Assembly: GCA_001179505.1 (NCBI GenBank)
Contig: CDMY01000748.1
Location: 186,001 to 250,000 of the forward strand
Length of the DNA stretch: 64,000 bases
Origin: Vitrella brassicaformis CCMP3155
Lineage: Eukaryota; Protista; Chromerida
Direction of reading: 5' to 3'
Part shown: piece after piece, positions 6,051-48,243 of the stretch
Position numbering within the stretch: the stretch's first letter is position 1
Layout: each line of letters begins with the position of its first letter
Program-made: the position numbers and the translations under genes
The notes under the pieces: generated by a model
The model's input: the letters and a program-made list of their open reading frames with translations, nothing else
Databases searched by the model: none
What the model was told of the DNA's origin: nothing

Positions 6051-6350
6051 NNNNNNNNNNNNNNNNNNNNNNNNNNNNNNNNNNNNNNNNNNNNNNNNNN
6101 NNNNNNNNNNNNNNNNNNNNNNNNNNNNNNNNNNNNNNNNNNNNNNNNNNNNNNNNNNNNNNNNNNNNNNNNNNNNNNNNNNNNNNNNNNNNNNNNNNNN
6201 NNNNNNNNNNNNNNNNNNNNNNNNNNNNNNNNNNNNNNNNNNNNNNNNNNNNNNNNNNNNNNNNNNNNNNNNNNNNNNNNNNNNNNNNNNNNNNNNNNNN
6301 NNNNNNNNNNNNNNNNNNNNNNNNNNNNNNNNNNNNNNNNNNNNNNNNNN
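6051..6350. other. Assembly gap (300 N)
   Basis: N run flanked on both sides by ccccagcctccctcccagccc, consistent with a collapsed tandem repeat. Confidence 0.99.
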
Positions 6351-8698: not shown

Positions 8699-8998
8699 NN
8701 NNNNNNNNNNNNNNNNNNNNNNNNNNNNNNNNNNNNNNNNNNNNNNNNNNNNNNNNNNNNNNNNNNNNNNNNNNNNNNNNNNNNNNNNNNNNNNNNNNNN
8801 NNNNNNNNNNNNNNNNNNNNNNNNNNNNNNNNNNNNNNNNNNNNNNNNNNNNNNNNNNNNNNNNNNNNNNNNNNNNNNNNNNNNNNNNNNNNNNNNNNNN
8901 NNNNNNNNNNNNNNNNNNNNNNNNNNNNNNNNNNNNNNNNNNNNNNNNNNNNNNNNNNNNNNNNNNNNNNNNNNNNNNNNNNNNNNNNNNNNNNNNNN
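8699..8998. other. Assembly gap (300 N)
   Basis: N run. It probably hides the equivalent of 10421-10887, including the ATG of the next gene. Confidence 0.99.
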
Positions 8999-10883: not shown

Positions 10884-12133
10884 ATGACGGCTTTGACGCT
10901 GGATCTGGTGTTGACGATGGTGTCTTCGGCGGCGATGGGTCATGCAGGGGGTCTTACGCTCCCTTGCACCGGCTTCCAGATGCTTCAGATGCCCAAGATC
11001 ACTCACACGAGCCACAAGCAGCTGCTGGGATCAAGGAAGAGACCATCTCGTAAGCACAGCTTGAGGATGATGGAGGGAAGCGCAGAGGATGCCTACGTGA
11101 GGAGTGGAGTGCTGCGCCTGTGTGTCCGTGTGTTGGTGCAGGTGTGGCTCCCGCGATGGCCGGGACGGACAGGGCGATTGGCCTCTTGCATGGCCTTTCG
11201 GTGTACTTCGACAGAGTGGACGGCTACCAGGTTGATGTGGAGGATGGTCGACGGCGGCCTGTTTCGAGCTGGCAGCACATCCGCAGACTCGGCGACGTGC
11301 AGGCCAAAGGGGCCGCTGGTCTGCCGCAAGTCAGGTACTGAAGAGGTGCACGGACACATGGATTGGTTGATTTTTTGTCCCCCAACGCGTCGCAGTGTCG
11401 TGTGTGTCCGTCTTTTGTGGGTGCATGCGTCAGTGCGGGCACCAAGATCATCTATCCAGCAAGCGATGAAGCTGTGGGTCTCTTCCAGGGCCGCCCCGCC
11501 CACGTCGATGAGAAGGGAGGCTTCATTGTCAATGTCGATGGCGAGTGGCGGCCCGTCAGGAAAGACGATTGGCCAGACGTCCATCAGGTTCACCGACTTG
11601 GACATGACCAACATACGCGGAGAGCTGTAAGTACACAGACATGAGGCAACAACTCTTCTTTTTTTTTTCTCCATCTATACTCGTTCCTTGCATGTGTCGT
11701 TGGTCGCATCAGGCCGGGCAGTGCGAAAGCCATATTCCAAGGCGACAGCACATTCATTCGGCGTGGGCGGTTTCTCTACCAGGTGGTGAGACGCGGCACA
11801 GGTGTCTGCCCGACCACTGGCGACACTGTCAAGTACAAAATGGCGGAATTTGTTGACGGATTCCGAGGCGACAGAGGCAGCAGATTGTACGTCAAATTCG
11901 AATCGAGCTTCGAGGATGGCGACCAGTCCTCGGGAGGCTTCGAGCGTGACATGCTGTGGTCGATGAGGGTTGGCGAAGTGCGGCACGTCATCGATTCAAT
12001 GAGTAGTGGCTCGGACACGACTTATTTCGAGCTGGAGCTGATCGAAATAATGGAGCAAGGTTTAGTAATATCACACTCTGACAGACTGAGCTGTTGTGCT
12101 GTGCTGTGCTGTGCTGCGAGTGAGTTTTGCTGA
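10884..12133 (+). pseudogene. Paralog 3 with a +1 frameshift in the second module (or a sequencing error)
   Basis: gacgtCCatcagg at 11576-11588 versus gacgtCatcaga in paralog 2. The downstream FKBP exon (QVVRRGTGVCP...SMRVGEVRHVI...YFELELIEI) is intact. Confidence 0.6.
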
Positions 12134-26176: not shown

Positions 26177-28782
26177 TCACTCCTCGCCCACCCCCTCCTG
26201 CCCGTCCGCAACGGCGAGCACGCTGGCCATCGACGCAAGCACACGTGCAGGGTTGTTCGTCTTGTAGTTCTGCAGCACCTCGTACGCCATGCCGATCTCC
26301 TGGAAGCGCTGAGTGTCTCCGCCCCTGTCCGGGTGGTAGATCTTCGCCAACACGCGATACTTGCGCCGGACCTCGTCGAAGCTGGCGTCAGGGTGGACGC
26401 AGAAGATCTCGTCAGCGATCTGCTTGGCCCTCTCCATCGCCTTCATCCACTCCTCGCGCAGCTTGGCCATCGCCTGCTCGATCTTGTCGATCTTCTCCTC
26501 TTTGGTCAACGGCACCAAGGCCTCGGCAAGGCTGCTCGTCAGACCATAATGGCAGTCGACAGACCCGCAGGCAATGCTAGCGGCCAAGACCCCGAGGCCG
26601 ACCAATGGGGCGAAGGGGCCGCTGACGGGGATGAAGGCAGCACAGCTGATGCCCAGGTTCACCGCAGTGCTCGCAGTGGTGCCAAATGCTTGCCGGCTGC
26701 ACTGCCTCCACGTCAGGTCTCCCTTCCAGCAGGTTCTGTACGCCACATCCCACATTATGGACACCACTCCACACCCCACCATGGCGATCACGCCGGTCGA
26801 CTGGGAGAGGCCCTTGAAAGCCTCGGCAGCGACTGTCGCCTCCTGGAGGGCGTATTTGGCTGCCTGCTTCTGCAGTAGGCGAGAACCGACGTGGCAGCCT
26901 CCGCCCCATAGCGCCCCAATCCCAGCGCCTTTTGCAGTGTCCGCAGCCACCAGCAGCCCAACCTCCTCCCACTTCCACTCGGGCATCTCGGCCAGCTCTC
27001 CGCGTCTGTATGCCTCCTGCCCCTGCTTGTGCTGCAGGTACCGGCTGCCGAGGGACATGGCACCACTCACAGCCCCCCCGACCACAGCGGCCGTGCGTGC
27101 CGCTCGCATAGCCCCTCCTGTGACGCTCTGGTTCGCCTGCAGCTTCAGCTCTTGCCTCCGCTGCATTGCCTGCCACTGCTCCTCGGACAATTTGAGCAGG
27201 CCGTTGATCTCGTCTCGTGTGGGGTTCCCGCTTGAGACCTCTCCATGCTCGAGCTTGTCGCTGCTGTTTGCTGTAGCCTCAGACACTTTCCCCTTGCGAG
27301 TCACATCGGTCTGCACGTTCTTCAGATGGTCTTGAGGGACGACGTAGTCGATATCGCCAGGGGTGGTCTGAAGCAGCTCCTCCTGAAGGCAAACAGACAC
27401 ACAGAGACGAAAGAGGAGTGACATGCGGTACTGTATGTCCGCTATCTATGCATCTCTGCCCACCCGGACTCCTGGCGGCAGGTTTTTCATGTTCGTGAAT
27501 TTCTCCATGTAGCCCTTGAGGGTGTCAGCGTCGGAGTACTTGGCCTTGTGGCCTCGCACATGCCTCTTGGTTGCTGATGAGTTGGCGTACGCCTTGGTCT
27601 GGATGCGCTTGACAACCTGCTGCCCGACGGGAAGGCTCTTATCCACAATGATGATGTCCACGGGCCCGTTCCCCCCCAGACGAATCGCCTGCACGTCTTG
27701 ATTGCCCTTCATCTGCGCATTGTAGTTGAAGCTCGACGTCAGGTACTCCTCGTACTCAAAGCCGTGCCTCCCCTTTGTGTGGGCAGCCCATTGAGTGCGG
27801 ACGCCCTGAAAACTCTCGCGCATGTCCGCCACCTTTTCGTTGTAGCTGTCGGCTGCCTTGTTGTACTCTGCGATGTACTTGTTCTCGGCCGCGGTCCGGG
27901 TGTTGTTGAAGTCGATCCCGCCCTGCTCGACGCCAGTAGTTGTGCCGTGGGCAGCACCAAACACAGAGCTGGCGGAAGCCGAGGGTGTCGTGGATGGTGG
28001 AGGGCTCTCGTGCTCAGGTGGCGCTGACGAAGCGATGGGCAGCTGGCCAGGCTCCTCATTGTTGCTATCTGACCGACCAGCAGACAACACACACTCACAC
28101 ACGTGTGAGACTGACGAACACTGGACATCCATCCTCTCTGTTCACTTACACTACACTCACCCGCAGTGCCCTGGAGCGCCTTCTTCTCTTGCTGCTTCCG
28201 CTGGAGATTGACGTTGAGGTTGTTAGCCGTCGTGCGGGTGCCCCTGATCGCCTCTGTCAGGGCACCGTCGAGGTTGACACTACTGACGGTGTGCAGTCGG
28301 AAGGAGTCGCTGTAGACGAGTGCCTTGAGGTGAAGGCGCTCGTAGGGGCCGTGGCCGACGGTGTACGTGCACTCCCACGTCCTTGTGGAATCGCCACTCA
28401 CCGCCTTCCACAATATCTTGAGTCTCACAATCTCGCCACGCTCCACAGATGCCACGAAGCACGGCACACTCTCGACTTCCTTCTCTTTCCTCCTCCGCTC
28501 GATAAGGAACGTGGCAGCAACAACTAGGGCGACTGGAATGGAGAGTCTCATCTCAGATCTCTTTCCAGCCGTCGTCAGGTCGTATCTCCTCTCAATCAGA
28601 GCCATTCTGAGAGGGTCCTTTCTCCGGCACTTGCTCAGTCGATGAGTGGTGCTGCAAGAGCATCGCTCAATCTCCAGCTGCTCGTAAGAGGCTCCGCTGA
28701 AGGGCAGAGGGTTGCGGGGGTCGTGGCCCTTCTCCGCTGGGATGGAGTAGTTGTCACACGATATCTGGAGCTCGACTGACAT
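26177..28782 (-). CDS. Unknown N-terminal domain + PD-(D/E)xK-like domain + glycine-zipper/hydrophobic region + C-terminal DnaJ domain (3 exons)
   Basis: Exons 28782-~28163, ~28070-~27463 and ~27385-26177 join in frame (G|AT phase 1; CGG|GAG phase 0). Motifs: GFEYEEYL..FN...GPVDIII...RIQTKAY; VVGGAVSGA, GAGIGALWGGG; EVRRKYRVLAKIYHPDRGGDTQRFQEIGMAYEVL. Confidence 0.75.
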
Positions 28783-29168
28783 CGTCGCCGAAAGATTGTG
28801 ATAGATCTCGCCCTCTCATCCCACAGGACACCAAATCTGATGCACACGACTGACCTGTCAACCATTACGCGACACACGTGACGACAGAACAAACAGAGAT
28901 GAACGTGTTGATCTCGGACAGAGTCTGGGTGGCCGTGCTGTCATCTGACCTACCTGTTGTTTGTCGTTTCTTGACTCCGGGGGAGAGGGGGGGAGAAGGA
29001 AAGGCACGGCGGCGAGCCACAGAACGATCGCACGCCTTTCCCTTCAGAAAGCGAGGTTCCGCATCGTATGAGACCAGCCATAAGAGCTCCCACCTGTGGT
29101 CTGAAAGCATTCGATTCATCAACAACAGAGATCAAGCGACAAATCGGGCGTGTGTCGTGACTGTCGCT

Positions 29169-32100
29169 ATGGTCGTGTGGCTGTTTGCCGTCCTCCTGGT
29201 GCCCTGGGCGGCTGTCGATGGGTTTGTGCGGCCACCACTCACACCGCTGCAGCCGCAGATGCAGCCCACATCACGGCTGGATGGCTTCCACCGCATCAGC
29301 CGACTCAGAGGACGTCAGCCAACACCGACACACATACAGATCTCACGCTGCAGTGAACGTCACTCTGACTGTGTGTGTGTGTGTGTGTCTGTGTGTGTGT
29401 CTGTGTCTGTGTCTGTGTCTGTGTCTGTGTCTGTGTATCTGTGTAGGGCGGTGTGTTGCCGCCATGAGTGGAGAACCGGTTGGGCTGTTGGATGGTCAGT
29501 TCGTCCATGGGGATGGCAAAGGCGGTTATGAGTTGGTGGTCAATGGTCAGCGGTTGGCCATCAAGCCGTCGTTCCACTCGCACATCAAGTTCTGCATCGA
29601 ACCCGACAAGTGAGCGACCTGAAGACCCAGACACAGACAGGTGTGCTTCCACCCTCGACTTGGTGCTGGTGGTCAGGTCATCTGTCGGCACCGATAAAGG
29701 CCAAGAGAATAAGGAAGGCGATCAGCTACCAGCACCCGCACCAACCCCAGCAGCGAGACCAGCGGCAGATGAAGGGACGGCGGACAGCAAAGACAACGAC
29801 ACGACTGACGATGGCTTCGTCCAGCACCTTTCTGGCGCACTTCACAAGGTGGTGCGGCAGGGCAGTGGCAGAGTGCCGACGGCCAACGACACCGTCAAGT
29901 TCGACGAGATTGGGTGGTTTGATGACTTTCACGGCCAGGAGAAAGCCTTCGATGACCGTGGGTTCGAGTGGCGTGTGTCTGATCTGGCTGACTGGTGGCG
30001 TGAGGCGATACTGTCGATGCGCGAGGGGGAGGTGAGGCAGATCATACGGCCAGCCAGATATTCTGTCCGCTACCTTCAGCTGCGGTTGATCGGCATTATA
30101 AACGACGCGTGAGTAACACTGTCACACAGGCACATTTGCTTTCATCCCGACTTGGTGCTGGTGGTCAGGTCGGCTGTCGGCACCGATAAAGGCCAAGAGA
30201 ATAAGGAAGGCGATCAGCCACCACCACCCTCACCGACCCCAGCAGCGGGACCAGCAGCAGATGAAGGGGCGGCGGACAGCAGCGACAACACGGCCGACGA
30301 TGGCTCCGTCCAGCGCCCGTCTGGTGCACCTCACAAGGTGGTTCAGCAGGACAGCGGCAGAGTGCCCACAGCCGACCAGGCCGTCAGTGTGGGTGTGACC
30401 AATGGCAATGACGCCACACTGCGGCGTCAGGAGGTCTCATCGCCAACCACAGCAAGTGGCCAGGGCGGCGGCGATGTGTTTGCTCAGTCGTCGTTGGGTG
30501 TGTTTTATCAAGTGGTGCGGCAGGGCAGTGGACCCAAACCGACACGTAAGCAACGAGTCAAGATCGACTACATCGAGTGGACTGATGACTTCGACGGACA
30601 AGACAAGAGATGGGACAGGCGTGGGTGGGAGTACCCTGTGTATGCTGAGCGTAATGAGTGCATCCATGAGGCCCTCACTGACATGCGTGTGGGTGAGGTG
30701 CGGCGTATTGTGGTGCCGGCCGGGCTCAGCATCACTGGGAAGGAAGGCTTCGTCGAGATGCGGCTATTGGACATCTGGTGAGTCGAGCTCATCCACACAC
30801 GTGTGACGATTGGTGTGCGCCACGTCATTCACTTCGTGTGTGAGTGGTGCTCCTCCTCTCCCCTTCAATGTTCCCTTTGCCAGGACTCCTGTGGGCTTCA
30901 GACAGATGCCGTCTGGCGTCTACTTTCAGGTGGTGCAGCCGGGCAGTGGGCCAAAACCGACAGGTGACCAACGCGTCAAGTATGACTTCATCCAATGGGC
31001 TGACGACTTCGATGGAGATCCAGTACACGAGAAGCGTGGGGAGGTGGATTGCCCGTCCGACTGTGATGAGTGGGAGGAGGAGATGTGGACTGACATGCGT
31101 GTGGGTGAGGTGCGGCGTATTGTGACGCCGGCCGGGCTGATCAACAAATGGACGGAGGATTTCATCGAGTTGCGGCTTTTGGACATCCTGTGAGTCGGGG
31201 TACATTCACACATGTGTGAGGATTGGTGTGCGTCATGGCATTCACTTCGTGTGTGTGTGGGTGTTGCTCTTCCAGTCCTCTTCGGTATTTCTTTGCCAGG
31301 ACTCCTATTGGCCCCGAGCGGCCACCATCACCACCAGCAGCAGCAGCTACGACGGCGTCTAATAACGACAGCAGCCATGAAGGATTCACTCTGTATCCCT
31401 CTGGAACCTATCATCAAGTGGTCAAAGAGGGCAGTGGGCCCAAACCGACGCATGACCAGTGGGTCAAGTACGACGTCATCGGGTGGCACGACGACTTCGA
31501 CTTGCAAGAGAAGGAATTTGAGGAAGGTCGGTGGGAGTTGCGTGTGTCTGAGTGCACTGAGTGGGTCCAGGAGGTCGTCACTGACATGCGTGTGGGCGAG
31601 GTGCGTCGGGTCGTCGTGCCGGCCAGACTGAGTGTCACTGGCAAGGAGAGATATATCGAGTACAGGCTGGTGGACATCATGTGAGTCGGTACACATTCAC
31701 ACACGTGTGCGGACGTTGATGTGACTCGCGGCATTCACTTCGACTGTGCGTGGTGCTCTTTGCTTTTTTGCCAGGAATTCTGTCGGCCCCGACTGGCGAC
31801 CACCACCACCAGCAGCAGCTCCGACGGCACCTAAGAATGACAGTAGCCATGAAGGGGCGGCGGACAGCAAGGGCGACGACACGACTGACGATGGCTTCGT
31901 CCAGCGCCCGTCTGGCGCACTTCATAAGGTGGTGCGACAGGGTAGTGGCAGAGTGCCCACACTCCACGAGCGCGTCAGGTATGACGAGATTGGGTGGCGT
32001 GATGGATTCGACGGCCAGGAGAAAGCCTTCGATGACCGTGGGTTGGAGTGGCGTGTGTCTGGTGGGCCGATGAGTGAGTGAGGCGATACTCTCGATGCGC

Positions 32101-34063
32101 GAGGGCGAACTTAGGCGCCTCATTACGCGAGATGGGAAGTACATCGAGCTGCGGCTGATCGGCATTATCGACGAGGAGTGAGAAACATCCACAAAAGGCA
32201 CGGCATTCACTTCGTGTGTGGGTATTTCTTTCTCTCCTCTTTGGTATTTTCTTTACCAGCACTCCCGTCGGCTTCACAAAGATGCCTTCTGGCGCCTACT
32301 GTCGAGTGGTGCAGCCGGGCAGTGGGCCAAAACCGACAGGTGACCAACGCGTCAAGTATGACTTCATCCAATGGGCTGACGACTTCGATGGAGACAAAGT
32401 ATGGGAGAGGCGAGGGGAGGTGGATCGTCCGTCCGACTGTGATGGGTGGGAGGAGGAGATGTGGACTGACATGTGTGTGGGTGAGGTGCGGCGGGTCATC
32501 CTGTCGGGCTCATTGAGCACCACTGGGGAGGATGCTTACATCGAGATGCGGCTATTGGACATCCGGTGAGTCGGGGCACGTCCACACACGTGTGAGGATT
32601 TGTGTGCGTCACGGCTTCACTTGGTGTGTGTGGGTGTTGCTCCTCCTGTCCTATCCGGCATTTCTTTGCCAGGACTCCTGTCGGCCCCGAGCGGCCACTA
32701 CCACCACCAGCAGCAGCAGCTACGACGGCGCCTAATAATGACAGCAGCCATGAAGGATTCACTCTGTACCCCTCTGGAACCTATCATCAAGTCGTACAGC
32801 AGGGTAGTGGGCCCAAAGCGACGCGTGAGCAGAATGTCACGGTCGACATCATCGAGTGGCGTGATGACTTCGACGGACCAGACAAGAGATATGATCTCCA
32901 TGGGGTGGTAGGTCTTGTGTCTTCCTGGGCTGAGTGGGAGCAGGAGATCCTCACTGACATGCGTGTGGGTGAGGTGCGCCGCGTCCTCGTGCCGGGCAGA
33001 CAGGAGGAGAGATACCTCGAGTACAGGCTGGTGGACATCCGATGAGTCGGGCACATTCACACACGTGTGAGGATTGATGTGCGCCACGGGACTCATTCAT
33101 ATCTGCGCATTGCTCTTTGGTATTTTCTTGTCAGGAATTCTGTCGGTTCCGAGCGGCCACCACAACCACCACCGCCACCGTCAGCAGCAGCAGCACCGCC
33201 ACCACTAGCAAGAGAAGAAGCGGCGGCCAGCGATGGCAGCAGGAGGCGGTCGACGGGCGTGTTGTCTCGGGTGGTGCAGCAGGGCAGCGGTCCCACACCG
33301 ACCCGTGACCAGCACATAAAAGCCGACATTATCGAGTGGGCTGACGATTTTGACGGCCAGGACAAGAGAGGGGAGGGCAGTGGGCTGGAGTTTGGTCTGT
33401 CTGATGTACGTGAGTGGCTCCAAGAGATGTGGACTGACATGCGGGTGGGTGAGGTGCGGCGGGTCACCCTGCCGGCCGAGATGAGCACTACTGGCAAGGA
33501 TGCTTACGTCGAGATGCGGCTACTGGACATCACGTGAGTCGGGTTACATTCACACACGTGTGAGGATTGACGTGCGTCATGGCATTCACTTCGTGTGTGC
33601 GTGGTGCTCTTTGGTGTTGTCTTTGCCAGGACTCCTGTGGGCTTCGGCCGACCACCACCACCAGCAGCAGCACCTACGACGGCGCCCAATGATGACAGCA
33701 GCTATGAAGGATTCACTCTGTACCCCTCTGGAACCTATCATCAAGTGGTCAAGGAGGGCAGTGGGCCCAAACCGACGCATGAGCAGTGGGTCAAGTACGA
33801 CAGCATCGAGTGGCGTGATGACTTCGACGGACGAGACAAGATAGGCGAGACGCGTGGGGGGGTTTATCGTGTGTCTAGGTGTCTGGTTTTAGAGTGGTTC
33901 AACGAGATCATAACCGACATGCGTGTGGGTGAGGTGAGGCGGGTTTTTTGTCCCGGCGGAGGGGGGACAGGACACGTGCTTCGAAGAGTACAGGCTGCTG
34001 GCGATTTGTGATAGTGAGATTGAGTGTGAGAATGAAGGCATTGATCTTAGTGAATGTGCCTGA
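29169..34063 (+). CDS. Signal peptide + unnamed module + nine tandem FKBP-like exon cassettes (three carry lesions)
   Basis: Exons 29169-29313, 29447-29609, 29677-30108, 30169-30777, 30884-31189, 31300-31680, 31775-32177, 32260-32565, 32673-33041, 33135-33533 and 33630-~34011/34063. All cassette junctions are phase 2. Confidence 0.75.
29677..34011 (+). repeat. Tandem exon-intron repeat array with higher-order structure
   Basis: Cassettes 1 and 5 share TTDDGFVQ..SGALHKVVRQGSGRVPT; 3 and 6 share VVQPGSGPKPTGDQRVKYDFIQWADDFDGD; 4, 7 and 9 share GFTLYPSGTYHQVV. Most introns share gtgagtcgg..cacacgtgtg..ggcattcacttcg. Confidence 0.92.
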
Positions 34064-35282
34064 CTGACTGACTCGTCGATCGATCGGCAACAGCGGAGCT
34101 CGAGGGCGGGCAAAGAGAGTGACGCTGACGGGTGAATGCGTGGATGGATGCAGGAGCGTCTGTAGGTCGTTCTGGCCTTCCAGGTATCTGTTGATCTCTG
34201 CATGTCGTTGACTGACTGGCAATTGTCACTTCCGCAATGCTGGGCGCATCTGCTGGACGCTTGTGTGCAGATGTAGGCGATGGATGGACCGGTGTGTGTA
34301 GGGGCGTCAGACAGGTCTTCAGTGGGGCTGGGTGGTCGGATGGCGACGGGTTGAATTGTGATGTATGTGATAACGACCCAATTTGTCCGTTATGATGAGC
34401 ACAAACATCAGAGTCACCGAGTCATTTGCGTCAGTGTGAAACACAATACATAGACACACACGAGAACGACATGTCACATCGGTGGCCACAATGAATAAAC
34501 GCATAGGTGGCCTGAATGAATGAATGCATGAAGGCAGACAGCACTCACCACCTCCCACACACGCACTGCCGCGACACCCACGAGCAAAGAGCTCACAGGA
34601 TGACCACAAGCCGTGAGCTCACAGCACCCAATCCGCTCACGCAGAGAGGACACGTGAGAGAAAGACGCCAAGCAACCGGAGAGAGAAAAAGGCTCCAGCA
34701 TCAGACAGATGGCCTTGTCGTATGGCTGACCTCGCCCACTCATCTATACCACGCACACAAAAAACTCGCCCACGCCCTTCATCAAGACTGCATCGGATCA
34801 GACAGCCATGCATTCGCGTTGAATAAAAGCAGCCACACACACACATACACACACACCCACAGAGAGAGGGAGAGAGGGCGAGAGAGAGAGAGATGCCGGC
34901 ATTTCTGCTTCTTTTGATTGCACAGACACGAAGAAAACCGTCACAGTTTCTCAGCCGATGGATGCCAAAAAAGCCCCACTCCTCACTCGTCGATAAACGA
35001 ACACATGACATGACGTCCACCGGCCGCCGAGAGATACAGCGACTTCACCACACCCAATCAATGCACTCACACATCGATGTGTGTGTGGATGGACGTGAGT
35101 GGCAGCCAAGGCGCACACACTAAGACAGATGACCAGAGTTCCACGCCCCGCACCAACGCAACTCTAGCAGGGCCATGCAGTGGCAAACGCGGACAAGCTG
35201 CTTGCCATAAAAAATGAAACATGACTGCCGGATGGCGCCACCGCCGCAATGCACACACAGCAGACACACCAGGAGGCAGTGC

Positions 35283-36912
35283 TCACAGGATGGCCACCAG
35301 CCTGTACTCGATGTAAGCCTCCTTGCCAGTGACACTCAGTCTGGCTGGCAGGATGATCCGCCGCACCTCACCCACACGCATGTCAGTGAACACCTCCTGG
35401 GCCCACTCAGGTTGATCAGACACACGAGCCACCAGCCCACGCTCCTCCCCTCTCTTGCCTGGGCCGTCGAAGTCGTCACGCCACTCGATGACGTCGATCT
35501 TGACGCGCTGGTCACGTGTCGCTTTGGGTCCACTGACCGGCCGCACCACCTGATAGCGAATCCCCGATTGCATCTCAGTGAACACAGCGCCGCCGCCCCG
35601 GCCATGCGGAGAGCTGAGGAGAGGAAGAGAGAGAGCCAATCATGACCTGTACGATCACTCTTCTCATGGGCATCTCACCTTTGCGTGTCGACGCCGTACA
35701 TGGCGGCCGTCTTGTTGAAGGTCTCCTGTCTGGGCGCACTGTCCATTACGAGCGGCATTCGCACCCCGCCCATTAGCTTTGTGTCGGGCAGTGAGGCCGC
35801 GTGTCGTTTGCGGCGGTAGTGGTCCACCAGACGGCGGACGTGGTCGACGGGCACATCCTCAATGGGAGCCGGCCACCTGATGGGGGACAACACACCACAT
35901 CACGCATACATCCAGCCAGCCTGGTGCTGGTGTGTACTCTGTTGATGCTCACAGGTTGAATCTGTTGGTGAGAGCAATGTCGCCCATCACATCGAGGGTC
36001 GACTGAGTCGTCGAAACGGTCTGGCCACACACGTCGACAGACCGAATGGCATCGCCGCCACTCAAAGGCGCCAGGAAGGGCTTCACGGCCTGATAGACAG
36101 ACATACAGACGCAGCCATGGACAACCTTCAGTGCTTTGATTGACTGTGTCTCTCTCACCGTAATTTCCATCATCGTCTGGTCGTATGCGGCCTTCTTGGC
36201 CGCCCGCTCGCTGTCGAGGTCGTTCTTCTTTGCCACGAAAGTCTTGACGAAGCTCTCCACCTCCGCCACGACCCCTCTCAGTTCTGCCGGCAGCCCGTGC
36301 GATGCCACCGTCGGCTCTTCCGAGTGACCCTGTGCAGCCGAAGATGCGTCGGTGGATGGCTTGTCGATGGGCGAGAGGAGCACTGCTGTCCAGAAGTCAT
36401 GAAGGCCTGCACACAACCCACACACACACACACACACACACACGTCCACACACATGCAGGTGGACAAGAGGAGAAGGTTTGCATGCGCCCTAATTACCTT
36501 GGTAGTTTCTCGTCTTTGCCTCGTCCATCAGCCGGTCCACCGCACCCTGCCCGTCCAGGATGGCCTCCAGCATCGCGTCAAACGCACGCGGACACACATC
36601 GACGAACACGCGATTGTCTGCATCACGACCCAGCCGCCCATCCCATCTGCCACCGAACAGCACCGCCAGCAGTGTGCCCTCGACGCTCGTCAGGTGCTTG
36701 CGGCGCACAGACGAGTGGCTCCCGCCGACATTGACCTTAAGCAGGTCGTCGCCAGAGGCCGCCGATGGGTCTAAGGCGCCGTGGTCACTCAGCAGTTTGC
36801 CGATGTCATAAGAGGAGGCCATGTCAGCCCGCTCGGCCTCGAGGCGCTCCATCGGGCCGACTATCTGCCTGTCCAGCCGGCAGAGGGCCTCGTGGCGAGT
36901 GAAGGGCTCCAT
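35283..36912 (-). CDS. KCTD-type BTB - coil - degenerate BTB - FKBP-like protein (copy 1)
   Basis: LKVNVGG..VRRKHLTSVEGTLLAVLFGGRWDGRLGRDADNRVFVDVCP; RSVDVCGQTVSTTQSTL...HVRRLVDHYRRKR; terminal FKBP exon QSGIRYQVV...DMRVGEVRRII...YIEYRLVAIL*. Five exons. Confidence 0.8.
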
Positions 36913-37267
36913 GACAGCAGACCGACGAACGCTGAGACACAGAGCAGCAGACAGACAGACAAACGGCAGATGCACTCATCAGATCTTCTTGATCATAGCC
37001 TCTGTGTGTCACTCCTGAGCTCTCCTCTTACCTCATTTGGCTGTTCCCTCTCCTACTCCTACTTGAAGCTCGCACGCCGCTGAAACCGCTCTCTCGCTGT
37101 GTGTGATTCGCGGTGCTCCCTGAAACCGCTCGCCTGTGTGTGATTCGGAAGGCATCGCTGCACGTCAGGGGGTCGAGAGCGTCACCCAGGTGAGGCAGGA
37201 GAGAGATAGCAATCAATTACAAGCCAGATCTGTCATGCTTGTGTGGTTGACAGGCACATCAGTTACG

Positions 37268-38911
37268 ATGGATGCCGATTTCAGCGTCCCTGTGATGCAG
37301 CTTCAGCTGCAGGGGCCATTGATGGCCATCAGCGACGCCATCAGCCAGCTGCATGCCCAAATCCGCCAGGCTGACGAGGACGCCCAGCAAGAGAGGCAGA
37401 AGCACGGCGCATCGGACCCATCAGCAGCGTCGCCCGATGACGTGCTGATTCTCAATATCGGCGGCGATGACAGATGGCGGGTGAAGCGGCAGCACATGAC
37501 TCAAGGGGAGGGCGTGGAGGGCACTCTGCTGGCGACGCTGTTCTCGGGCTGCTGGGACGGCCGGCTGAGCAAAGACGACAAGCAGCGGGTGTTCATCGAT
37601 ATGTCCCCCTCAGCGTTTGAGACCATCCACACGGCCATATTGGACGCCGAGACGATGCGCAGCGCGGGTAAGGCGGCGTCGGTTGCCACGCTGCTCGAGG
37701 AGACATCCCAGCGGGACTGCACCGGTAAGGGCCATGAAGGCGGCAACACACTCATCCTGTCTTCTCACTTATCGTTTGGCTGCCGTGGTGTAGGTCCCCA
37801 TGGCTTCTGGATCAAGCTGCTGCTGTCGCCACTGGACAAGGCGGCCTCAGAGGCCACTTCCAGCGGCGTCACTGAGCCGCAGCCGGCCGCCACCAACAGC
37901 CCCGCTGCGAGTGACGACGCCGTCAAGCCTCTGCAGGCGAGGGTCGAGGCCATCATGAAGGCTTTCGCCAAGGAGAAGGCCCGGCTGGAGGCGCAGCTGA
38001 GGGCGGCCAACAAGCGACGCGACAATCTCGACAAGGAGATACAGGTGATGAGATGCGCCCAGAGGGAGAGGAGGGTTGTTGGTCTGATGCTGTGTGTGGT
38101 TCACAGGCCGTGAGTCCCTTCCTGCTGCCTCTGAGTGGCGACGATGACCCCATCAGGTCTGTCGACGTCTGCGGCCACGTCATAACGACCACTCAGTCGA
38201 CTGTCGATGAGATGAGTGACGAGCTGCGGAACAGATTCGACAGGTGAGCATCGACCCACCGAAGCCCTCACTGACAGCGATGCACACTCGAAGATGGCTG
38301 TGTGTATCCTCTCTGTGTGTCTTAGGTGGCCGCGGCCGGTTGAGGTGGTGCAGCCCGACCACATCGGCCGCATGGTCGATTACTACCGCCGCAAGCGACT
38401 CGGTGCGTCTGCCGCCGACATGGCTGCAGTGCTGAAGATGGACAAGCCCACCAAGCAGAGCGCCTTCGACATCAACGCGGCCATGTACGGCGTTGTCAAC
38501 ACAGACACACCCACCACACACGGCGCGCAGCAGACCAGGTACGCAGATGGAGAGCTGCGCAGGAAGGCTGACCTCGCCGTCTATCTCTCTGTCTTGTTCC
38601 CTTTGTGCAGTGGCGATGGCTTCATTGAGATGCCGTCTGGTAATCGGTATCGCATCGTCACGGAGGGCACCGGGGGGGTCCCCACAGCCAACGACCGCAT
38701 CAAGTACGACTACATTGCGTGGCGTGATGGATTCGACGGCCGGGAAAAAAGCATCGATAGCCGTGGGCGGGTGGGTCGTGTGTCTGATGCGGCTGAGTGG
38801 TGGCGTGAGGCGATGCTATCGATGCGGGAGGGGGAGACGAGGCAGACCATACGGCCAGCCAAATATCATTATGGCCGCTACGTTGAGCTGCGTTTGATCA
38901 GCATCGAGTAG
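37268..38911 (+). CDS. BTB - coil - degenerate BTB - FKBP-like protein (copy 2)
   Basis: LILNIGG...TLLATLFSGCWDGRLSKDDKQRVFIDMSP; RSVDVCGHVITTTQST...RMVDYYRRKR; PSGNRYRIVTEGTGGVP...SMREGETRQTI...YVELRLISIE*. Intron positions match copy 1. Confidence 0.8.
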
Positions 38912-39228
38912 GAGAGAGTCCACACACAAGTGGGCGGCTGTGTGTGTCACACACTCGTGTGTGCGGCCGGGGGCTCTTCCATCGTCGCCTGGCTGACAGT
39001 GTGCCTCGACTTTGAGCGATGGAGTGAAGGTCTTTTGCTTTTGTTAGCTGTATCAGTGCGCATGAGTGCATCTGTCGTGCAGTGTGCAGCGTGCGTGCTG
39101 GTCGACTGGTTGATAATGATCCGCTGATCGACTCACTCAGGATGATTTTGTGTGCCGTGTGTGCTTTTATTCAATCACATGCGTTGCGTTGCGTGCAGAC
39201 AGGCCAGCGATAGCAGCGAGGGTGTACA

Positions 39229-39264
<36 letters not shown>

Positions 39265-39864
39265 GCTCTCTTCACTCACTCAGACGGAAAAACAGCCAGC
39301 CACGCATCCATCACACAGACAGAAAGGGAAGATTGAGAAGGCGACAGACACCATTTATGAGTGGATTGTGGACTAGTGCATTTCACGGTCTCTGTCTCTG
39401 CTGCATCCCTTTGCAATGCATACCTTGCATCTATGAATGGAAAAAGACCGAGACAAAAAGAGAGAGAGAAAGGCAGACAGGCGACCTTTGCAAGACAAGA
39501 CAGTCAGAAAATGCCATGCACACACACCCACACGCAAAGAGAGAGAGGGAGAGAGAGAGACCCACACCGGCTTTTTTCACCGGTTGCCATCGACCACAGA
39601 GGTCATAGGCAACAAAAGATAGGCAACCCAGACACACACACACAGGCAGGCAGTAGGCAGACACACAGGCAGACAGGCAGAGGCCATGGGACCGATGAAT
39701 GGATGGATGAGTGGATGAAACCTTCGCTTGATGGACAAGACAGTCAAAAGAAGCCACGCATTCGTCAGCAACCACACACTGATTGCCTGCACACTCAACA
39801 TGGACCAAAATGGCCCGCCAATTACGGGTGTCCATCTCTCATGCGCTCATTCGATTACTGAGGC

Positions 39865-41542
39865 TCACAGGTAAGACAGCTGACCGTTCATGAAGGGCCA
39901 GCTGGTGGACGCCACCCCACTCATGCCATCGTCGGCAGGAAAGTGACCCACGAGGGTCCCGCCCCCCATCACTCCGCCATAGTGTTTGTCGCGTCTGTAC
40001 CGCACTGTGTACTGCAGCCGGTCGCCCTTGCGTAACATCGGCCCTTTGCCGTCATGGTAGTGACACTGGGTGATGCTGGTGACGTACCCCTCCTCATGGC
40101 CGGCCTTGTGGGGCGTGCAGCCGTAGATGGCCGTCATGTCGCAGCGCCAATCGATCCCAATACCGTCATCCGTGTCGCTGCTGTTGCTGCTGATGCCGGC
40201 AAGGACCGCGTCGATGGCCCCGATGTGCATATGGGCGCGCACGCCGATGAGATGGAAGTCCTCATTCACCAGCACAGTCGCCGTCTTGGTGTCGACACAC
40301 CTGTCGGCAATATCATCATGGCCACTGTCGCCAAGCCGCCGCTCCTTGATGGCCACTGCAAGATGGCTGGCTGATGGCTTCATGCATCCCTCTGCGGGGA
40401 AGACGTTCCACTCATGCCGTCCGCCGACGGCATCGATGATCATGTTGGCGCGGACCGGCCGCACAATGGGGCTGACACAGCCATACCGCACCGTGTATTT
40501 GACTCTGTAGTACTTGGGGGCGGGGCGGGCAAGAAAACCGCCCGGAGTGGGCGGACCGAAGACGGCATCTGGGTCGCTGTTGCAGTTGGGGCAGTGGTGG
40601 GGGTCATCGAAGGCATCTGTGCCGGTGGAGGTCACGAAGGGGTCGAGTGTCGTGCGGCAGTGGGCCTGTGGGACACACACAGACAGGCCAAGTGGTGAGA
40701 GTGGACACACGTGTGAGCGCAGGAGACTAACGCCATCTGGGCAGCAGTTGAAAGACCCATGCCGACCATCGGGGGCACATAGACACTGAAAGATACACAC
40801 ACACATCCCGCCATCTCACACACAAAAGGCCTGCAGGGGTCCCATTGATGCCATGTGTGTCTTACCTGAATGCACGCCGGCACGTTCGTGACGTTTTGCA
40901 GCATCAGCAGGTGCACGTTGAGCCACCACTTCTCCTTGCCGGCCGTCGTGAAGGCATAGGGAGCGGTGAGAGATACTATCGGAGTGCCTGCAGCCACACA
41001 CATGGGAGCACACACGAATGTGCCTTCACGTCTATCCATCCATCCCTCCATCCATCCATCCATTCATCCATCCATCCATCGGTGACCTCTGGTTTCGGCG
41101 CCGGTGCCCAGCTTCCCCACCAGCTCGTTGCCGGCATCAGGCGTCGTGTAGAACAGAAACCAATGATGCACGTACACCTCAAAAGGCACACGCACACACA
41201 AATCCATAGAGACCGCACTCATCGATGGGCGTACCTCGTCGAGTGGCACACTGACATTCCTGTCGTCCACAATCTCCCCCCACAGGCCTCTGATGGCCAT
41301 CGGCTGGTCGTCAGGCATCTCGACGGGCACGTCGAAGGGATCGGTGTTGAGGACGTCACCCGGAGAGAGCGGAAATGCGGTGCTGACGTAGGTGCTCTCC
41401 CTCTCATCGCTGTCGGCGACCTCAGTGGTGGTGTGGTGGCTGAATGAGAGACTGAAGCCCCCCCAGAGGCGGAGACGCCATCGAGGGCAGCGGAGGCGAC
41501 AGAGATGAGGCAGGCCAGAGAGGAAAGGCCCTCCAAAAACAT
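39865..41542 (-). CDS. SURNod19-like / copper type II monooxygenase-fold protein
   Basis: VPLDE|[57 protein letters not shown] and YGGVMG occur in the order typical of this family. The signal-like [18 protein letters not shown] is one base out of frame at a G7 run (41458-41464). Confidence 0.7.
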
Positions 41543-41920
41543 GGTCACCGTAGCTGTCAGGCAGAGGACAGCCGAGGCAGGTCGGCAGACAGCTGCACCT
41601 CTCTCTGTACGTAACGCCATGGTATCGTAAATGCTGATATTGAGATGGTTTCGCCGTCTTGTGAGTCATTATGTGGCCATGTACTGGTCGGCGTATTACA
41701 GGGCATCACGGTTACAGGCGAAATTAGCTTGTATTCATGAGTTCAATCTCTTCCCTCAATTTTGCGAGCTCACATATTCGAGCGACCAGGAAAGGAGTTG
41801 CCAAATGAGCTACTGTGGCCTGTTGTGTGTGCGTGTGGTCTGGTGTGGCATGTTGTGCTGGCCACGTGTCACATGCGAGGAGTCACACGGGCGGTTTCTG
41901 ACGAGCGATAGTGTGTCGCC

Positions 41921-44645
41921 ATGATGGATGGCTCGGAGGAGGATGATCCGTCGGGCCAGACCTCAGCATCTGGCACTATGATTAGCAAGGTGAGAGGGCA
42001 CCAACGGGGCGGAAGATGACCGGCGATTGAAAACAGGTTTGCTGCTGTGGTGTGTGTGGTTCGGTGCAGTTGTGTGCTGACGCTAGGGTGGTGCGCGATG
42101 GCCTTCAGCGGCTGCAGAGGGACGCACGGCAGAGCTGTGAGGCATTCCAACGAGAGGGCGACGTTCCTGCAGACTCGGTGGCGACGCTCCTGTCCCTCTC
42201 GGCTGCGTCCGCTCACGCGTCGGCTGCCGAGTCCTCCATTAGTGCGATGGTGGATGCCCTCAACAGAGCGGCGGCGTCACTCCCCCATCAGCCAGCGGAG
42301 GACATCGGTGCGTCTGCTGCCGCCGCCGCTGCTGTGGCCATGGAGGCGGCATCTGAAGAGCCCGGTGCTGAGGTATGGTGGACTGAAGAGGGATGAGTGC
42401 AGGGCGGTGTATGGCATTTGTGAGTTGTTCCTATGTTGCTGGCCGGTGCAGAGTAGTATGGTAGAGGAGGAGGCTGCCCGGACGCCATCGTTTCGCCTGA
42501 CCCACACGTCGGGGAGACCGCCGACCAACGATGGACCGGTGAGAGCAAGACAGGGAAGACCACTGAAAAACATGACCTGGTGCGACCTCTGTCTCTGGAT
42601 GTGGTTTGTGCAGCCCGCCCGTCGCCTCTCTCGCGATGAGCTGTCGGGTGTGTTCGGCTTCTACCAGCCATGGGAGCTGACCCCCGTCGCCCCCACGATC
42701 GGCAAGACCCTTGTCGGCTGGGCGGCCCAGCAGTACACCCACCTGACCATCGACGGGTCAGAGAGGGGCGGCGTGCATCAGCTGTGGGAGGGCATGCCGC
42801 TGGAGGTGGCATACCGGTGGGGCCGACGTGCCACCAACCTGGCCCACCTGCACCTCATATATCCTCGGGCTGCCAGCCTTTGGTGTCGTGGGATTTGGGT
42901 GGCGATTCTCGAGGGCAATGCAGCGGCTAGGAAGGCCACGAGGGAGAGGAGGGAGGAGGGGCAAGCCGAGGACGGGGCAGCGGCAGCGGCAGCAGCGGGG
43001 GCGTCCAGACAGGACGGCCCATCCGCCGCCTCATCCATCAAGGTCCTCAGCTTCGAGAAAGCCGTCGACGGAGAGCCGTATGCTGAGCTCAACGACGTCT
43101 CTGCCGACCCCCTGCCCCCCTTTCCCTCTCCCGTCGACCTGTCGGCCCTCGAGGAGGTCCATCGCATGCCTCACGGCTGTGCGGCCGTGCGCACGGGCGG
43201 TCGCGTGTGGCACACGCCATTAGTGCGGGTCATGACATTCGAGTCGGACGACGGTGATGATGAAGTGGAGGCGGCGAAGGAGTGGATGACGTCATGCGAG
43301 CATCTGGAGGTATTCGACGATGGCAATTCGTCGACCGTCGACAAGGTGCAGCTGCTGTCCGTGCCGCCCCCCGGCACTTCCCTCGCCCGCCTGCAGTCCA
43401 TCGGCACCCTCGGCAAACATGGATGGGATTTGTATGAGGGGAATGCCGATGCCATGCGGGATGTGCTGGCCAGCATGCGGGAGGCCCTTGTGAAGCGGGG
43501 CCCTCGGCAAACATGGATGGGATTTGTATGAGGGGAATGCCGATGCCATGCGGGATGCGCTGGCCGCCTTGCAGCTGGCCCTCTTGGAGCGGGGATGTCG
43601 CAGGTCCCTCAGCGAGCTGCCCATCGCGGTCGAGGGGAAGATCACGACCGGGCACAAGGGGGTGTTGCGTGAGCTGGCACGGCTATCGGAGGCAGTGCTG
43701 CAGCCACAAGCCCTCGACAAGCCGCAGTTCAAGATAGAACGCGAGGGCGAGATGGAGCTGGAGCTCATCGAGTGGATGGCCAATGAGAGCTCTCAGGTAG
43801 CAGACACACCATAGATGGCTGCACATTTATCCAATCACAACACAATCGTTGTCCCCAATGTGGTCTCTTTGCAGGTTCAGAAGCTCGTTCGTGAGTTTGC
43901 CGCTCTCGCTGGTGTAGTGTTGTACGAGAATGAGCTGACCGACGCCGCAGATACCGTATATTTCCCTCGCGCGACCATTTTCCGCTGTCCACCACGGCAC
44001 CTGTCGGCAGAGGTGATCGACGGCCTGGCCAGGACGGTCGCCAACAGCATGCCGCAGTGCCGCACCATCGAATTCGTGGACACAGAGACGCACCTTGACG
44101 CGGCGAAGAATGCTGTGGTGTTCCTGAAGGCGCTCAAGAGGCACATGGCCACAGGGGAGGGACAGGGGGGCAGTAGCAGCGGCAGTGAGGGGGAGAGGCG
44201 ACTGTCGGTGAAGATCGAGGTGTCGGCGGGTTGCATCTCAGATCGTAGCCGGCCGCTGCAGGGGTGGACGAGCCACGACCTGCCGGCCATCGACGACGTG
44301 CATCTCGATGTGAAGGGTAAACGGGAGTGGAATGGGCAGACCGACTGAGCAATTCCTCGCGTCACATTTGGCTGCCTGCATTGGTGTGGCTGTGCAGGCG
44401 GCTTGCCAGCTGGCGCGACGGAGGAGGTGCTCAACGGCTCGCTCATGGCGTCGCTCGCTGGCATCATGTCGCGACCCGGTGTGCGCAAGGCGTCCGCGTC
44501 GCTTCACCGCCCATCTCTCCGTCAGGGCGTGCGGCGGCTCTTCAACACGCAGCTGGCGGGGCTCAGCCTGCTGGGCGCACCGAACACCATCACCATGGGG
44601 CACCACATCTTCACCAGCACCATCACCGTTGCCAGACGCACATGA
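41921..44645 (+). CDS. Hypothetical protein with F-box-like segment, frame disrupted by an internal 94-nt duplication
   Basis: RLSRDELSGVFGFYQPWEL (F-box-like), a long exon to about 43790, then exons at 43875-44317 and 44399-44645. The 5' exon structure is uncertain. Confidence 0.5.
43407..43594 (+). repeat. 94-nt imperfect tandem duplication
   Basis: ccctcggcaaacatggatgggatttgtatgaggggaatgccgatgccatgcgggatg starts at both 43407 and 43501; the tails diverge. Confidence 0.95.
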
Positions 44646-46244: not shown

Positions 46245-47938
46245 CTACTTGATGATTTTGAGCAGCCTGAGCTCTACGTATCCCGTCTTCTTGGATATCT
46301 TGCGGACCTCTGGGGGAACGATTAGGCGTCGCGTCTCGCCCACCTTCATGCTCGTCAAGGCCTCACGCGACCACCGCCCCAGCGTCGACACCTTCTTCTC
46401 CCACCCCCTGCAGACACAACACAAAACACGCACAAGACACAGCAATGCAGGCAAGCAGGCAGGTACGTATGACACAGGCTGGTTGGGTGTGGGTGGCTGC
46501 GTACTGGTAGTGGAATGCTTTTGTCTCGCTGTCGAATGAGTCTGCCCACTCGATGTAGTCGTACTGGATGTGGCTGTCGAGCTGCGGCTTGGGGCCGGTG
46601 CCCGCCGTCACGATCTCGTAGCGCACTCCCAGCGGGCTCTCCTCATACTTGACGCTATCCATGTGACACACACACACAGAGGGGAAAGATTCGACCATTT
46701 CTTCAATGGGTCTTTTCTTCGGGCGGCTGGCGTACCTGAGATCGACACCGTACATGGCGGCGGTTTTGTTGAAGAAGTCCTGCTTGGGGCCGTTGCCCAT
46801 CTTGAGCGGCACAGCCACGCAGCCCTGCAGACACTCGTCAGTGACGGCGGCGGCGTGTCGTTTGCGGCGGTGGTAGTCGACCAGTCGACGGATGTGCTCC
46901 TCCGACACGTCCTCAACGGCAGCGGGCCACCTGCAGACACACACAGCGACCAAAGGGGAAACGTCTGTTCCCCGCCCGCCTCGTGTGTGGTGTGTGTGGT
47001 GGTCACTTACAGTTGGAATCTACTTGCCAGTGCGACGTTGCCCATCTCAGTGAGTGTGGAGTCGGCCGTCATGATGACCTTGCCACACACCTCCACCGAG
47101 CGAATGGGATCGTCGCCACTGACGGGCTTCAGGAAGGCACTCACAGCCTAAAGAGCACACAGACACACAGACACACACTGACAAGGATCCTTCGCCCTGA
47201 TCCCTGCCCCTCTCTGCCCACCGTGACTTCCTTGATGAGGCCGTCGTACTGGTGCTTCTGTTGCTGCACCTCCTCGTCCACTTTGGCCTTCTCCGCCATG
47301 TAGCCCTTGAGGAACGACTCGACGGTCTTGCAGAACCCCCGCAGCTCATCCACGCCGCCGGCCGACACCGAGGGCGCCTCGTCGGTGCGGATGCGCTTGC
47401 GGGAGGGCTTCTCGATGGGCGACAGCAGCCGACGCACCCAGAAGTCATGAAGACCTGCACACACACAAAGAGGCAGAGGCACAGGCCGTCCACACACACC
47501 CATTGCCCTCTCGTTGCCGTGAGCACCTCTGTAGTTGCGGTTGGCCATCTCGGTCATGAGCAGGTCGACGGCCGCCTTGCCGCCCTCAAACAGCGTGTTG
47601 CGCACCTTCTCGAACGCCTCGGACTCCATGTCGATGAAAATGCGATTGTCTGCGTCGCGAATGAGCCGCCCGTCCCACCGGCCAGAGAACAGGGCCGCCA
47701 GCACAGTGCCCTTAATGCTGGTCAGGTGCTTGCGGCGGACACACGACTGACTCCCGCCGACATTCAGCAGCAGCAGGTCGTCGCCAGAGGCCGCCGATCC
47801 GTCAGATGCGCCATGCTGGGCCATCGCTTTGGTGATGTCGTAGGCGTTGTCCTTGCGCCGCTCATCAAGGGATTCGAGCAGCGCCACGACGTGGCGGTCG
47901 AGCTGCGACGTCGCATTGACGCGAGTGAGCGGCTCCAT
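46245..47938 (-). CDS. BTB - coil - degenerate BTB - FKBP-like protein (copy 3; extra intron inside the FKBP domain)
   Basis: LLLNVGG..VRRKHLTSIKGTVLAALFSGRWDGRLIRDADNRIFIDM; RRLVDYHRRKR; SPLGVRYEIVTAGTGPKP...YDYIEWADSFD...|GWEKK...SMKVGETRRLIVPP...YVELRLLKIIK*. Confidence 0.8.
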
Positions 47939-48243
47939 AGTCACAGGATGATAAACGCTGACACACACAGAGCAACAGACGACTGAGGGATGGATGGATG
48001 GATACCGGATGGATGACACATTGAATGGCTGCGTTTCTGACCTGAAGTGGTTGGTTGGTTGGTTGGTTGGTGGCTGGGGAATTGCCTTCGCTCGGCACCA
48101 TGAAGCTCGCAAAAGCTTCTGCCTCAAGTGCAATCAATTGAATTGGCGTTGTCACACAAGGTACACGAAGCTTGGAATGGCAAACAGCTGTCCGTTGATG
48201 CGCCTGCCGCTGTGTCTGTCGCAGATCTCGTCTGTGCTATCAG

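What the first reader, a model, noticed from the sequence alone, without database searches (positions are those of the whole stretch)
29169..34063. Nine-cassette FKBP-like exon array: a candidate combinatorial splicing/diversification locus
Seen: after a leader and module exon come nine exons, each encoding one FKBP-like domain plus a P/A-rich linker, all bounded by phase-2 sites. Seven of the eight internal cassettes have lengths divisible by 3 (432, 609, 306, 381, 306, 369, 399 nt). Introns are 60-110 nt and mostly paralogous. The type order A-B-C-D-A-C-D-E-D shows multi-cassette duplications. Established: symmetric exons can be skipped or swapped without frameshift. Inference: either a beads-on-a-string multi-domain receptor or a Dscam-like isoform generator with variable binding domains.
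Basis: partly seen in the sequence, partly recalled or inferred. Interest (0 to 1): 0.85.

Follow-up and report, generated by a model that had tools for sequence, protein, structure and literature searches.

The report
Tandem FKBP-exon gene with broken tail

Summary
The nine-cassette array is real. It is in Vitrella brassicaformis CCMP3155 and is publicly split into CEM32327/CEM32328. Each cassette folds as an FKBP (Z 14.6) but keeps 0-3 of 9 core active-site residues. RNA contigs give only neighbour-to-neighbour joins (one direct, five inferred, three not seen); no skip from this locus was seen, so a Dscam-like generator is not supported, though contigs drop rare isoforms. Corrections: cassette 5 is frameshifted, stops at 32079-81 and is in the mRNA; cassette 7's donor is AT; cassette 4 starts at 31276; the last stop is 34011, not 34063. 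The likely product is a 788-aa protein with a plastid-type leader, one small beta module, four domains and no membrane anchor. Mechanism: all 21 stand-alone family copies end G-stop, a ready phase-2 donor, so tandem duplication chains them. Sister genes carry 1, 3, 4 and 5 units. Pocket residues are positively selected family-wide (omega 1.7), weakly in the array alone (p 0.08). The nearest intact relatives are algal FKBPs with thylakoid-lumen-type leaders. The scan has already found this family on other DNA many times.

The parts
29169..29313 (+). Leader exon (145 nt, phase-1 donor at 29314): signal peptide of about 18 aa, then a Phe-started, Arg-rich transit-peptide-like stretch
   Evidence: The same donor is spliced in a paralog's RNA contig (X7 record 25).
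29447..29609 (+). Module exon: end of transit peptide plus a 48-aa beta-rich module shared by many family members; no Pfam or PDB match, weak SH3/KOW-like resemblance only
   Evidence: pLDDT 91; best Z 3.8
29677..30108 (+). Cassette 1 (type A): P/A/D-rich linker + FKBP-fold domain; donor GTGAGT
   Evidence: join to cassette 2 inferred from the RNA contig end 30203
30169..30777 (+). Cassette 2 (type B), a chimera: 30174-30386 is a cut-off copy of cassette 1 (87%); 30383-30782 resembles the end-exon of the gene at 419-815 (85%), with its acceptor AG left at 30386-87
30884..31189 (+). Cassette 3 (type C)
   Evidence: join to cassette 4 inferred from X7 bin depth 3.81 = predicted
31276..31680 (+).
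   Evidence: X5 record 12, X7 record 27, 0 mismatches
31775..32177 (+). Cassette 5 (type A), frameshifted by a 2-nt loss near 32065-32080; premature stop 32079-32081 ends the 788-aa product; included in the mRNA
   Evidence: (RNA X7 record 27 and DNA X6 record 21, 0 gaps)
32260..32565 (+). Cassette 6 (type C); transcribed and spliced, downstream of the stop
   Evidence: (join to cassette 7, contig end 32779)
32673..33041 (+). Cassette 7 (type D); donor changed to ATGAGT while the TGA is kept. The public model uses a cryptic phase-2 donor at 33021, which removes most of the last strand
   Evidence: splicing out of this exon was not seen
33135..33533 (+). Cassette 8 (type E)
   Evidence: join to cassette 9, contig end 33733
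33630..34011 (+). Cassette 9 (type D, last exon); +1 near 33947 and -1 near 34005 scramble the last strand; stop 34009-34011
   Evidence: (three runs, 0 gaps)
34012..34217 (+). Probable 3' untranslated region, continuous with cassette 9 in contigs of the RNA-like runs (lower bound)
   Evidence: X5 record 15, X7 record 29

Best explanation
This is one gene that grew by tandem copying of the family's mobile END exon. Shown: that exon starts at a phase-2 acceptor and ends N-N-G + stop, so it already carries a phase-2 GT donor. Inferred: when a copy lands 60-110 nt downstream with its acceptor, the old stop (G|TGAG) is read as the donor and the domains are chained in frame; unequal crossing-over and exon import then change the number and order of units. 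Shown: the mRNA splices neighbour to neighbour and includes the frameshifted cassette 5. Inferred: this strain makes a 788-aa protein (leader, beta module, four whole domains, one stump), and cassettes 6-9 are transcribed but untranslated and decaying. Inferred: the protein goes to the plastid and works as a non-catalytic multivalent binder or chaperone-like scaffold, each domain's former PPIase pocket holding a different peptide or protein. Diversity is made in the DNA over evolutionary time, not by splicing.
For: Joins: c4>c5 seen directly; c1>c2, c6>c7 and c8>c9 because RNA contig ends equal the shared-30-mer breakpoints 30203, 32779 and 33733; c3>c4 and c5>c6 from bin-depth arithmetic. All 21 stand-alone copies with a stop have G before it, 12 as GTGAG. 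Donor lost but stop kept twice (c7; L003 cassette 4); stop lost but donor kept twice in the P0035 model. Sister genes with the same leader and module have 1, 3, 4 and 5 units, and L003 is a segmental duplicate with order A-C-(C/D)-E-D. All three lesions lie in cassettes 5-9, none in 1-4; L003 also breaks at its tail. FKBP fold: pLDDT 94, Z 14.6; 0-3 of 9 core residues kept, 40s bulge and 80s loop deleted. Family pocket omega 1.74 vs 0.46 elsewhere, p 3e-8; framework under purifying selection in the array (omega 0.36). Leader: Phe after the hydrophobic stretch, 7 K/R vs 1 D/E, no later membrane segment; PMC6668581 describes this Phe motif in chromerids. Nearest intact FKBPs share the WxDDF insert and have twin-Arg-type leaders.
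Against: Only contigs were available, and they drop rare isoforms. Joins module>c1, c2>c3 and c7>c8 were not seen, and five of the six joins are inferred by arithmetic. No targeting predictor was run, and PMC6668581 says the Phe is less strict in Vitrella. Array-only positive selection is not significant (p 0.08-0.09; 0.008 without the loop), and recent duplicate pairs keep their pocket residues. Gene conversion can inflate omega. No ligand is known. A stop 96 nt before a donor would normally trigger decay of the mRNA.
Confidence: 0.62

Rival explanations
1. Dscam-like or combinatorial splicing: the symmetric cassettes are skipped or swapped in the RNA to give many isoforms; skipping cassette 5 would also restore the frame into cassettes 6-9.
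For: All boundaries are phase 2 and seven lengths divide by 3. Cassettes 6-8 keep open frames and pN<pS against their closest copies. There is a second in-frame acceptor at cassette 4 (31299) and inside cassette 2 (30387).
Against: All joins traced to this locus are adjacent, and one RNA contig runs unbroken c3>c4>c5. The only GT..AG skip listed (29609>30169) comes from a contig carrying the paralog P0035's letters. No transcript-derived skipped protein turned up. No docking/selector complement.
Confidence: 0.1
2. Regulated length switch: because each donor hides an in-frame stop, keeping any one intron ends the protein cleanly at a domain boundary, and the cell uses this to set how many domains are made.
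For: The in-frame TGA is in all eight internal donors. Two GT>AT changes have made such clean ends permanent (c7, L003).
Against: No retained-intron contig from the RNA-like runs is listed. Bin depths fit spliced-out introns 2 and 5. GTGAG is simply the common donor, and a phase-2 GTGAG always reads TGA. P0035 lost the stop at two donors.
Confidence: 0.08
3. Runaway duplication by-product: the array is a transcribed but mostly useless product of an unstable, repeat-rich region, and the extra domains add nothing.
For: Three lesions in five tail cassettes; similar tail breaks in L003; fast copy-number change; weak array-only positive selection.
Against: Framework omega 0.36 in the array. Cassettes 1-4 are intact. 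Multi-unit versions exist at four loci with a conserved leader. The last cassette is intact in a wild relative (L001).
Confidence: 0.15
4. Secreted or surface multi-domain receptor.
For: N-terminal signal peptide; P/A-rich linkers; variable pockets.
Against: No membrane segment or hydrophobic tail. A Phe-started basic stretch follows the signal in this gene and its sisters. The nearest intact FKBPs carry plastid-type leaders.
Confidence: 0.05

Closest known systems
FKBP-type PPIases (PF00254); Burkholderia/Legionella Mip, FKBP12
   Same: Same fold (Z 14.6, rmsd 2.2 A over 95 residues; profile E 3e-5).
   Different: Each domain scores below the Pfam cut-off, keeps 0-3 of 9 core residues, and lacks the 40s bulge and 80s loop. 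Here the pocket is the most variable part, not the most conserved.
Algal FKBPs with a WxDDF insert and twin-Arg-type leader (P0118 from the dinoflagellate Apocalathium, P0136, P0154, P0162)
   Same: Highest-scoring intact relatives (53-61 bits per domain vs 43 or less for others). They share the insert before the FDSS motif. Likely parent subfamily (no tree built).
   Different: They are single-domain with a full active site. The Vitrella copies are degenerate, multiplied and lack an evident twin-Arg lumen signal.
Multi-FKBP proteins (wheat FKBP73, FKBP52, FKBP65-type, planctomycete 4-6-domain FKBPs)
   Same: Tandem FKBP domains, some inactive (own knowledge; hits).
   Different: Here one exon is one domain, the unit is a former last exon, and the number varies from 1 to 9 between recent duplicates.
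Dscam1 mutually exclusive exon clusters; protocadherin / mod(mdg4) / lola variable exons
   Same: Tandem paralogous exons of the same phase (own knowledge).
   Different: No one-of-n choice seen; neighbours are joined; no docking/selector pairing found.
Exon shuffling of symmetric domain exons; birth-and-death tandem-domain genes (KRAB zinc-finger arrays, LRR receptors)
   Same: Works like these: unit duplication, unequal crossing-over, tail decay, fast-changing binding residues (own knowledge).
   Different: The unit is a terminal exon whose stop doubles as donor, the scaffold is an enzyme fold, and the likely site is the plastid.

Membership tests
FKBP-type PPIase | FKBP fold | tested here: met
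FKBP-type PPIase | Pfam FKBP_C above cut-off per domain | tested here: not met
   at most 15.8 bits vs 21.1. Only the summed whole-protein score passes (39 bits).
FKBP-type PPIase | Conserved pocket (Y26, F36, D37, F46, V55, I56, W59, Y82, F99; R42, H87, I90/91 loops) | tested here: not met
   0-3 of 9 kept, both loops deleted. Mapped by sequence alignment, not by coordinates.
FKBP-type PPIase | Isomerase activity / FK506 binding | not testable with these tools
   Needs an assay
Dscam-type exon cluster | Tandem paralogous same-phase exons | tested here: met
   one donor is AT and one exon is frameshifted
Dscam-type exon cluster | One-of-n (mutually exclusive) inclusion | tested here: not met
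   Adjacent cassettes occur together in RNA contigs
Dscam-type exon cluster | Docking-site/selector RNA pairing | tested here: not met
   only a palindrome in the repeated intron and 17-22-nt, 77-88% matches at chance level
Dscam-type exon cluster | Minor skipped isoforms | tested here: inconclusive
   Only contigs were served, and they drop rare variants
Complex-plastid-targeted protein | Signal peptide + Phe at +1 + basic, acid-poor transit peptide | tested here: met
   by hydropathy and composition only; motif as in PMC6668581; cleavage site judged by eye
Complex-plastid-targeted protein | Observed import or predictor score | not testable with these tools
   No SignalP/ASAFind here; not found under FKBP terms in the PMC6668581 supplements
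Membrane receptor | Membrane span or anchor after the leader | tested here: not met
Diversifying recognition module | omega > 1 at binding face, < 1 on framework | tested here: inconclusive
   Met for 30 family copies; not significant for the nine cassettes alone (p 0.08)

The most novel reading that the evidence does not exclude
A plastid-located, multivalent recognition protein built from pocket-diversified FKBP domains. Its valency is set by exons whose stop codon is also their splice donor, so that duplication adds a unit in frame and one base change or a kept intron trims the chain cleanly, possibly with minor skipping (such as 4>6) adding isoforms. It would be the organelle arm of a Vitrella-specific surveillance or immune-like repertoire.
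Probability: 0.2. Interest if true: 0.8.

Novelty: new variant of a known kind. Interest (0 to 1): 0.48.

Why it matters
It shows step by step how a last exon becomes a repeatable internal exon: the stop codon is a ready splice donor, and gains and losses in both directions are visible among sister genes. It also places a fast-changing, probably non-catalytic FKBP scaffold in the plastid of a close photosynthetic relative of apicomplexans, where no such variable binder is described in the papers I could search. The public annotation splits one transcription unit into two 'peptidylprolyl isomerase' genes. It is not evidence for a new splicing-based diversity generator.

Tried and rejected
My own first idea, nine alternative last exons each ending at its TGA (note), was rejected as the main mode because donors 30109, 31681, 32566 and 33534 are used. 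Mis-assembly or sequencing error was rejected for the cassette-5 and cassette-9 frameshifts (DNA and RNA contigs, 0 gaps); the AT donor could not be checked. The long 'skips' have non-GT..AG ends, inserted letters or 20-37-nt sides and come from paralogs laid at 88% likeness. My first pocket map (from the Mip HMM alignment) misplaced F36/D37; it was redone from the closer algal FKBPs after I had seen the site list, so the first, blind enrichment (7/11 vs 10/87, p 3e-4) is the fairer one. The complement between the leader-exon end and cassette donors was rejected as chance: an 8-mer multiplied by the repeats, and also present in the one-domain sister gene. Module: no Pfam, PDB or Atlas hit. Papers: none on this family.
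Full report
Source and layout. The window is from Vitrella brassicaformis CCMP3155. Two public proteins map exactly onto the finding: CEM32327.1 (788 aa, 29169-32078) and CEM32328.1 (470 aa, 32282-34008). The sequence shows a 145-nt leader exon, a 163-nt module exon and nine cassettes behind phase-2 acceptors. Internal lengths are 432, 609, 306, 381, 403, 306, 369 and 399 nt, and the introns are 60-110 nt.

Where the description fails. The donor after cassette 7 is ATGAGT. Cassette 5 has lost 2 nt and stops at 32079-32081. Cassette 9 has an extra base near 33947 and lacks one near 34005 against the matching locus of a wild relative, so it stops at 34009-34011 with a scrambled last strand; 34063 is a stop in another frame. 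Cassette 2 is a cut-off copy of cassette 1 (87%) joined to an end-exon like that of the gene at 419-815 (85%), acceptor remnant included.

RNA. Only assembled contigs were served, and run types are not on record. X5 and X7 behave as RNA (spliced) and X6 as DNA. One X7 contig joins 31276-31680 to 31775-32159 with no mismatch or gap. So the GTGAGT donor is used, cassette 4 starts at 31276, and the broken cassette 5 is in the message. Other RNA contigs stop matching exactly at donors 30109, 32566 and 33534. Their overhang lengths put their ends at 30203, 32779 and 33733, which are the points where 30-mers become shared with another copy, and two of them are also DNA contig ends. That gives c1>c2, c6>c7 and c8>c9. 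Bin depths fit c3>c4 (3.81 predicted and seen) and c5>c6 (implied 27.9 among neighbours of 28-31). Module>c1, c2>c3 and c7>c8 were not seen. The one listed GT..AG skip (29609>30169) is in a contig with the letters of the paralog P0035. Both frameshifts are in DNA and RNA contigs with 0 gaps. Contigs drop rare forms, so minor skipping stays open. No skipped transcript-derived protein appeared in the protein searches, and no docking/selector pairing was found.

How the array is built. In the window and seven fetched loci, all 21 stand-alone copies with a stop at the domain end have G just before it, 12 as GTGAG (the copies are related, so this is one inherited trait). The end exon is therefore already a 2-2 exon. 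A tandem copy with its acceptor turns the stop into a donor (inferred). Both reversals are seen: GT lost and TGA kept after c7 and after the fourth unit of CEM05786, whose fifth unit is then annotated as a separate gene; TGA lost and GT kept at two donors of the CEM05778 model. Sister genes with the same leader and module carry 1 (P0056), 3 (P0036), 4 (P0035) and 5 (L003) units. L003 is an 80-86% segmental duplicate of this region whose order A-C-(C/D)-E-D matches cassettes 5-9. An ENA metagenome contig (L001) matches the end of c8, c9 and 1 kb of flank. The flank is 90% identical at aligned bases, the last exon 79%, intact and of another type. It is probably the ortholog, but a close paralog is possible.

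The domain. A model from 14 copies has pLDDT 94 and matches Mip/FKBP12 at Z 14.6. Single cassettes stay under the Pfam cut-off. The best-scoring intact FKBPs are algal proteins with a WxDDF insert that the Vitrella copies share, and with twin-Arg-type leaders. Against them the cassettes lack the 40s bulge and 80s loop and keep 0-3 of 9 core residues, so isomerase activity is unlikely (inferred). All strongly degenerate hits that I could name are Vitrella, fused to BTB, SET, RING, HMG or CBM20 fronts. My own codon models on 30 copies give M2a over M1a (LRT 145, omega 3.1 on 23% of sites). This holds in each half with its own tree, and selected sites are enriched at pocket positions (9/13 vs 8/85 on the revised map). 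For the nine cassettes alone the pocket omega is 1.39 (p 0.08) and the framework 0.36, and recent duplicates keep their pockets. Types diverged under selection; fresh copies are conserved.

Address and product. After an 18-aa hydrophobic start comes Phe and a 38-aa stretch with 7 K/R and 1 D/E, the same in two sisters; there is no later membrane segment. PMC6668581 reports Phe at +1 in chromerid plastid presequences, less strictly in Vitrella. The module folds as a small beta domain without a clear relative. The observed message encodes the leader, the module, four whole domains and a stump. All three lesions fall in cassettes 5-9, as expected if the tail is no longer translated. The message persists despite a stop 96 nt before a donor; decay of such messages is reported as inefficient in Plasmodium (PMC10449492, title and start of abstract only), which may or may not apply here.

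Verdict. A real, transcribed tandem-domain gene, diversified in the DNA by duplication and exon import, with a broken tail in this strain. It works like a birth-and-death multi-domain binder; it is not a Dscam-type cluster by the tests available. The scan has already reported this FKBP-like family, its pocket variability and the stop-as-donor trait on other DNA. I retested these here. What this locus adds is the RNA join map, the tail decay, the copy-number series and the likely algal plastid parent. I found no paper on the family.

Noticed in passing
window 35283-36915 (-), 37234-38911 (+), about 46250-48130 (-): Three BTB-coil genes, each ending in one FKBP-like last exon (Pfam BTB_2 on 47141-48130).
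   Followed up: partly
window 419-1121 (-): Two-exon gene with a different short N-terminal module and an FKBP-like last exon; this exon type is the source of the 3' part of cassette 2.
   Followed up: partly
window 7261-8542, 9000-10169, 10884-12100 (+): Three tandem genes with a signal + Phe-type leader, two copies of the beta module and one more distant FKBP-like domain; they flank assembly gaps (N runs 6051-6350, 8699-8998).
   Followed up: partly
window 26177-28782 (-): Head-to-head neighbour, 387 nt from the array's ATG; it has a C-terminal DnaJ domain (E 1e-11) and glycine-rich hydrophobic stretches. Sister arrays have a different head-to-head neighbour (in L004 an FKBP-like gene).
   Followed up: no
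window 39865-40806 (-): Stress up-regulated Nod19 (PF07712) gene, also present in the duplicated block L003/L004.
   Followed up: no
window 60022-61062 (-): ORF with four DUF6831 (PF20724) stretches, E 3e-62.
   Followed up: no
window 29013-44210 vs L003/L004 (CDMY01000364.1): A large segmental duplication at 79-89% identity, covering the array and its neighbours.
   Followed up: partly
L001:1555-1558: The metagenome contig switches from the array's 3' flank to the neighbouring BTB gene in the opposite orientation at a short shared word: either an inversion or a chimeric assembly.
   Followed up: no
L006:6743-6788: The one-domain sister gene model (P0056) has a 44-nt gap inside the domain, which may hide a frameshift.
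   Followed up: no
introns at 31681-31774, 32566-32672, 33042-33134, 33534-33629: Each holds the same short CA/TG palindrome near its 5' end, which accounts for most inverted repeats.
   Followed up: partly
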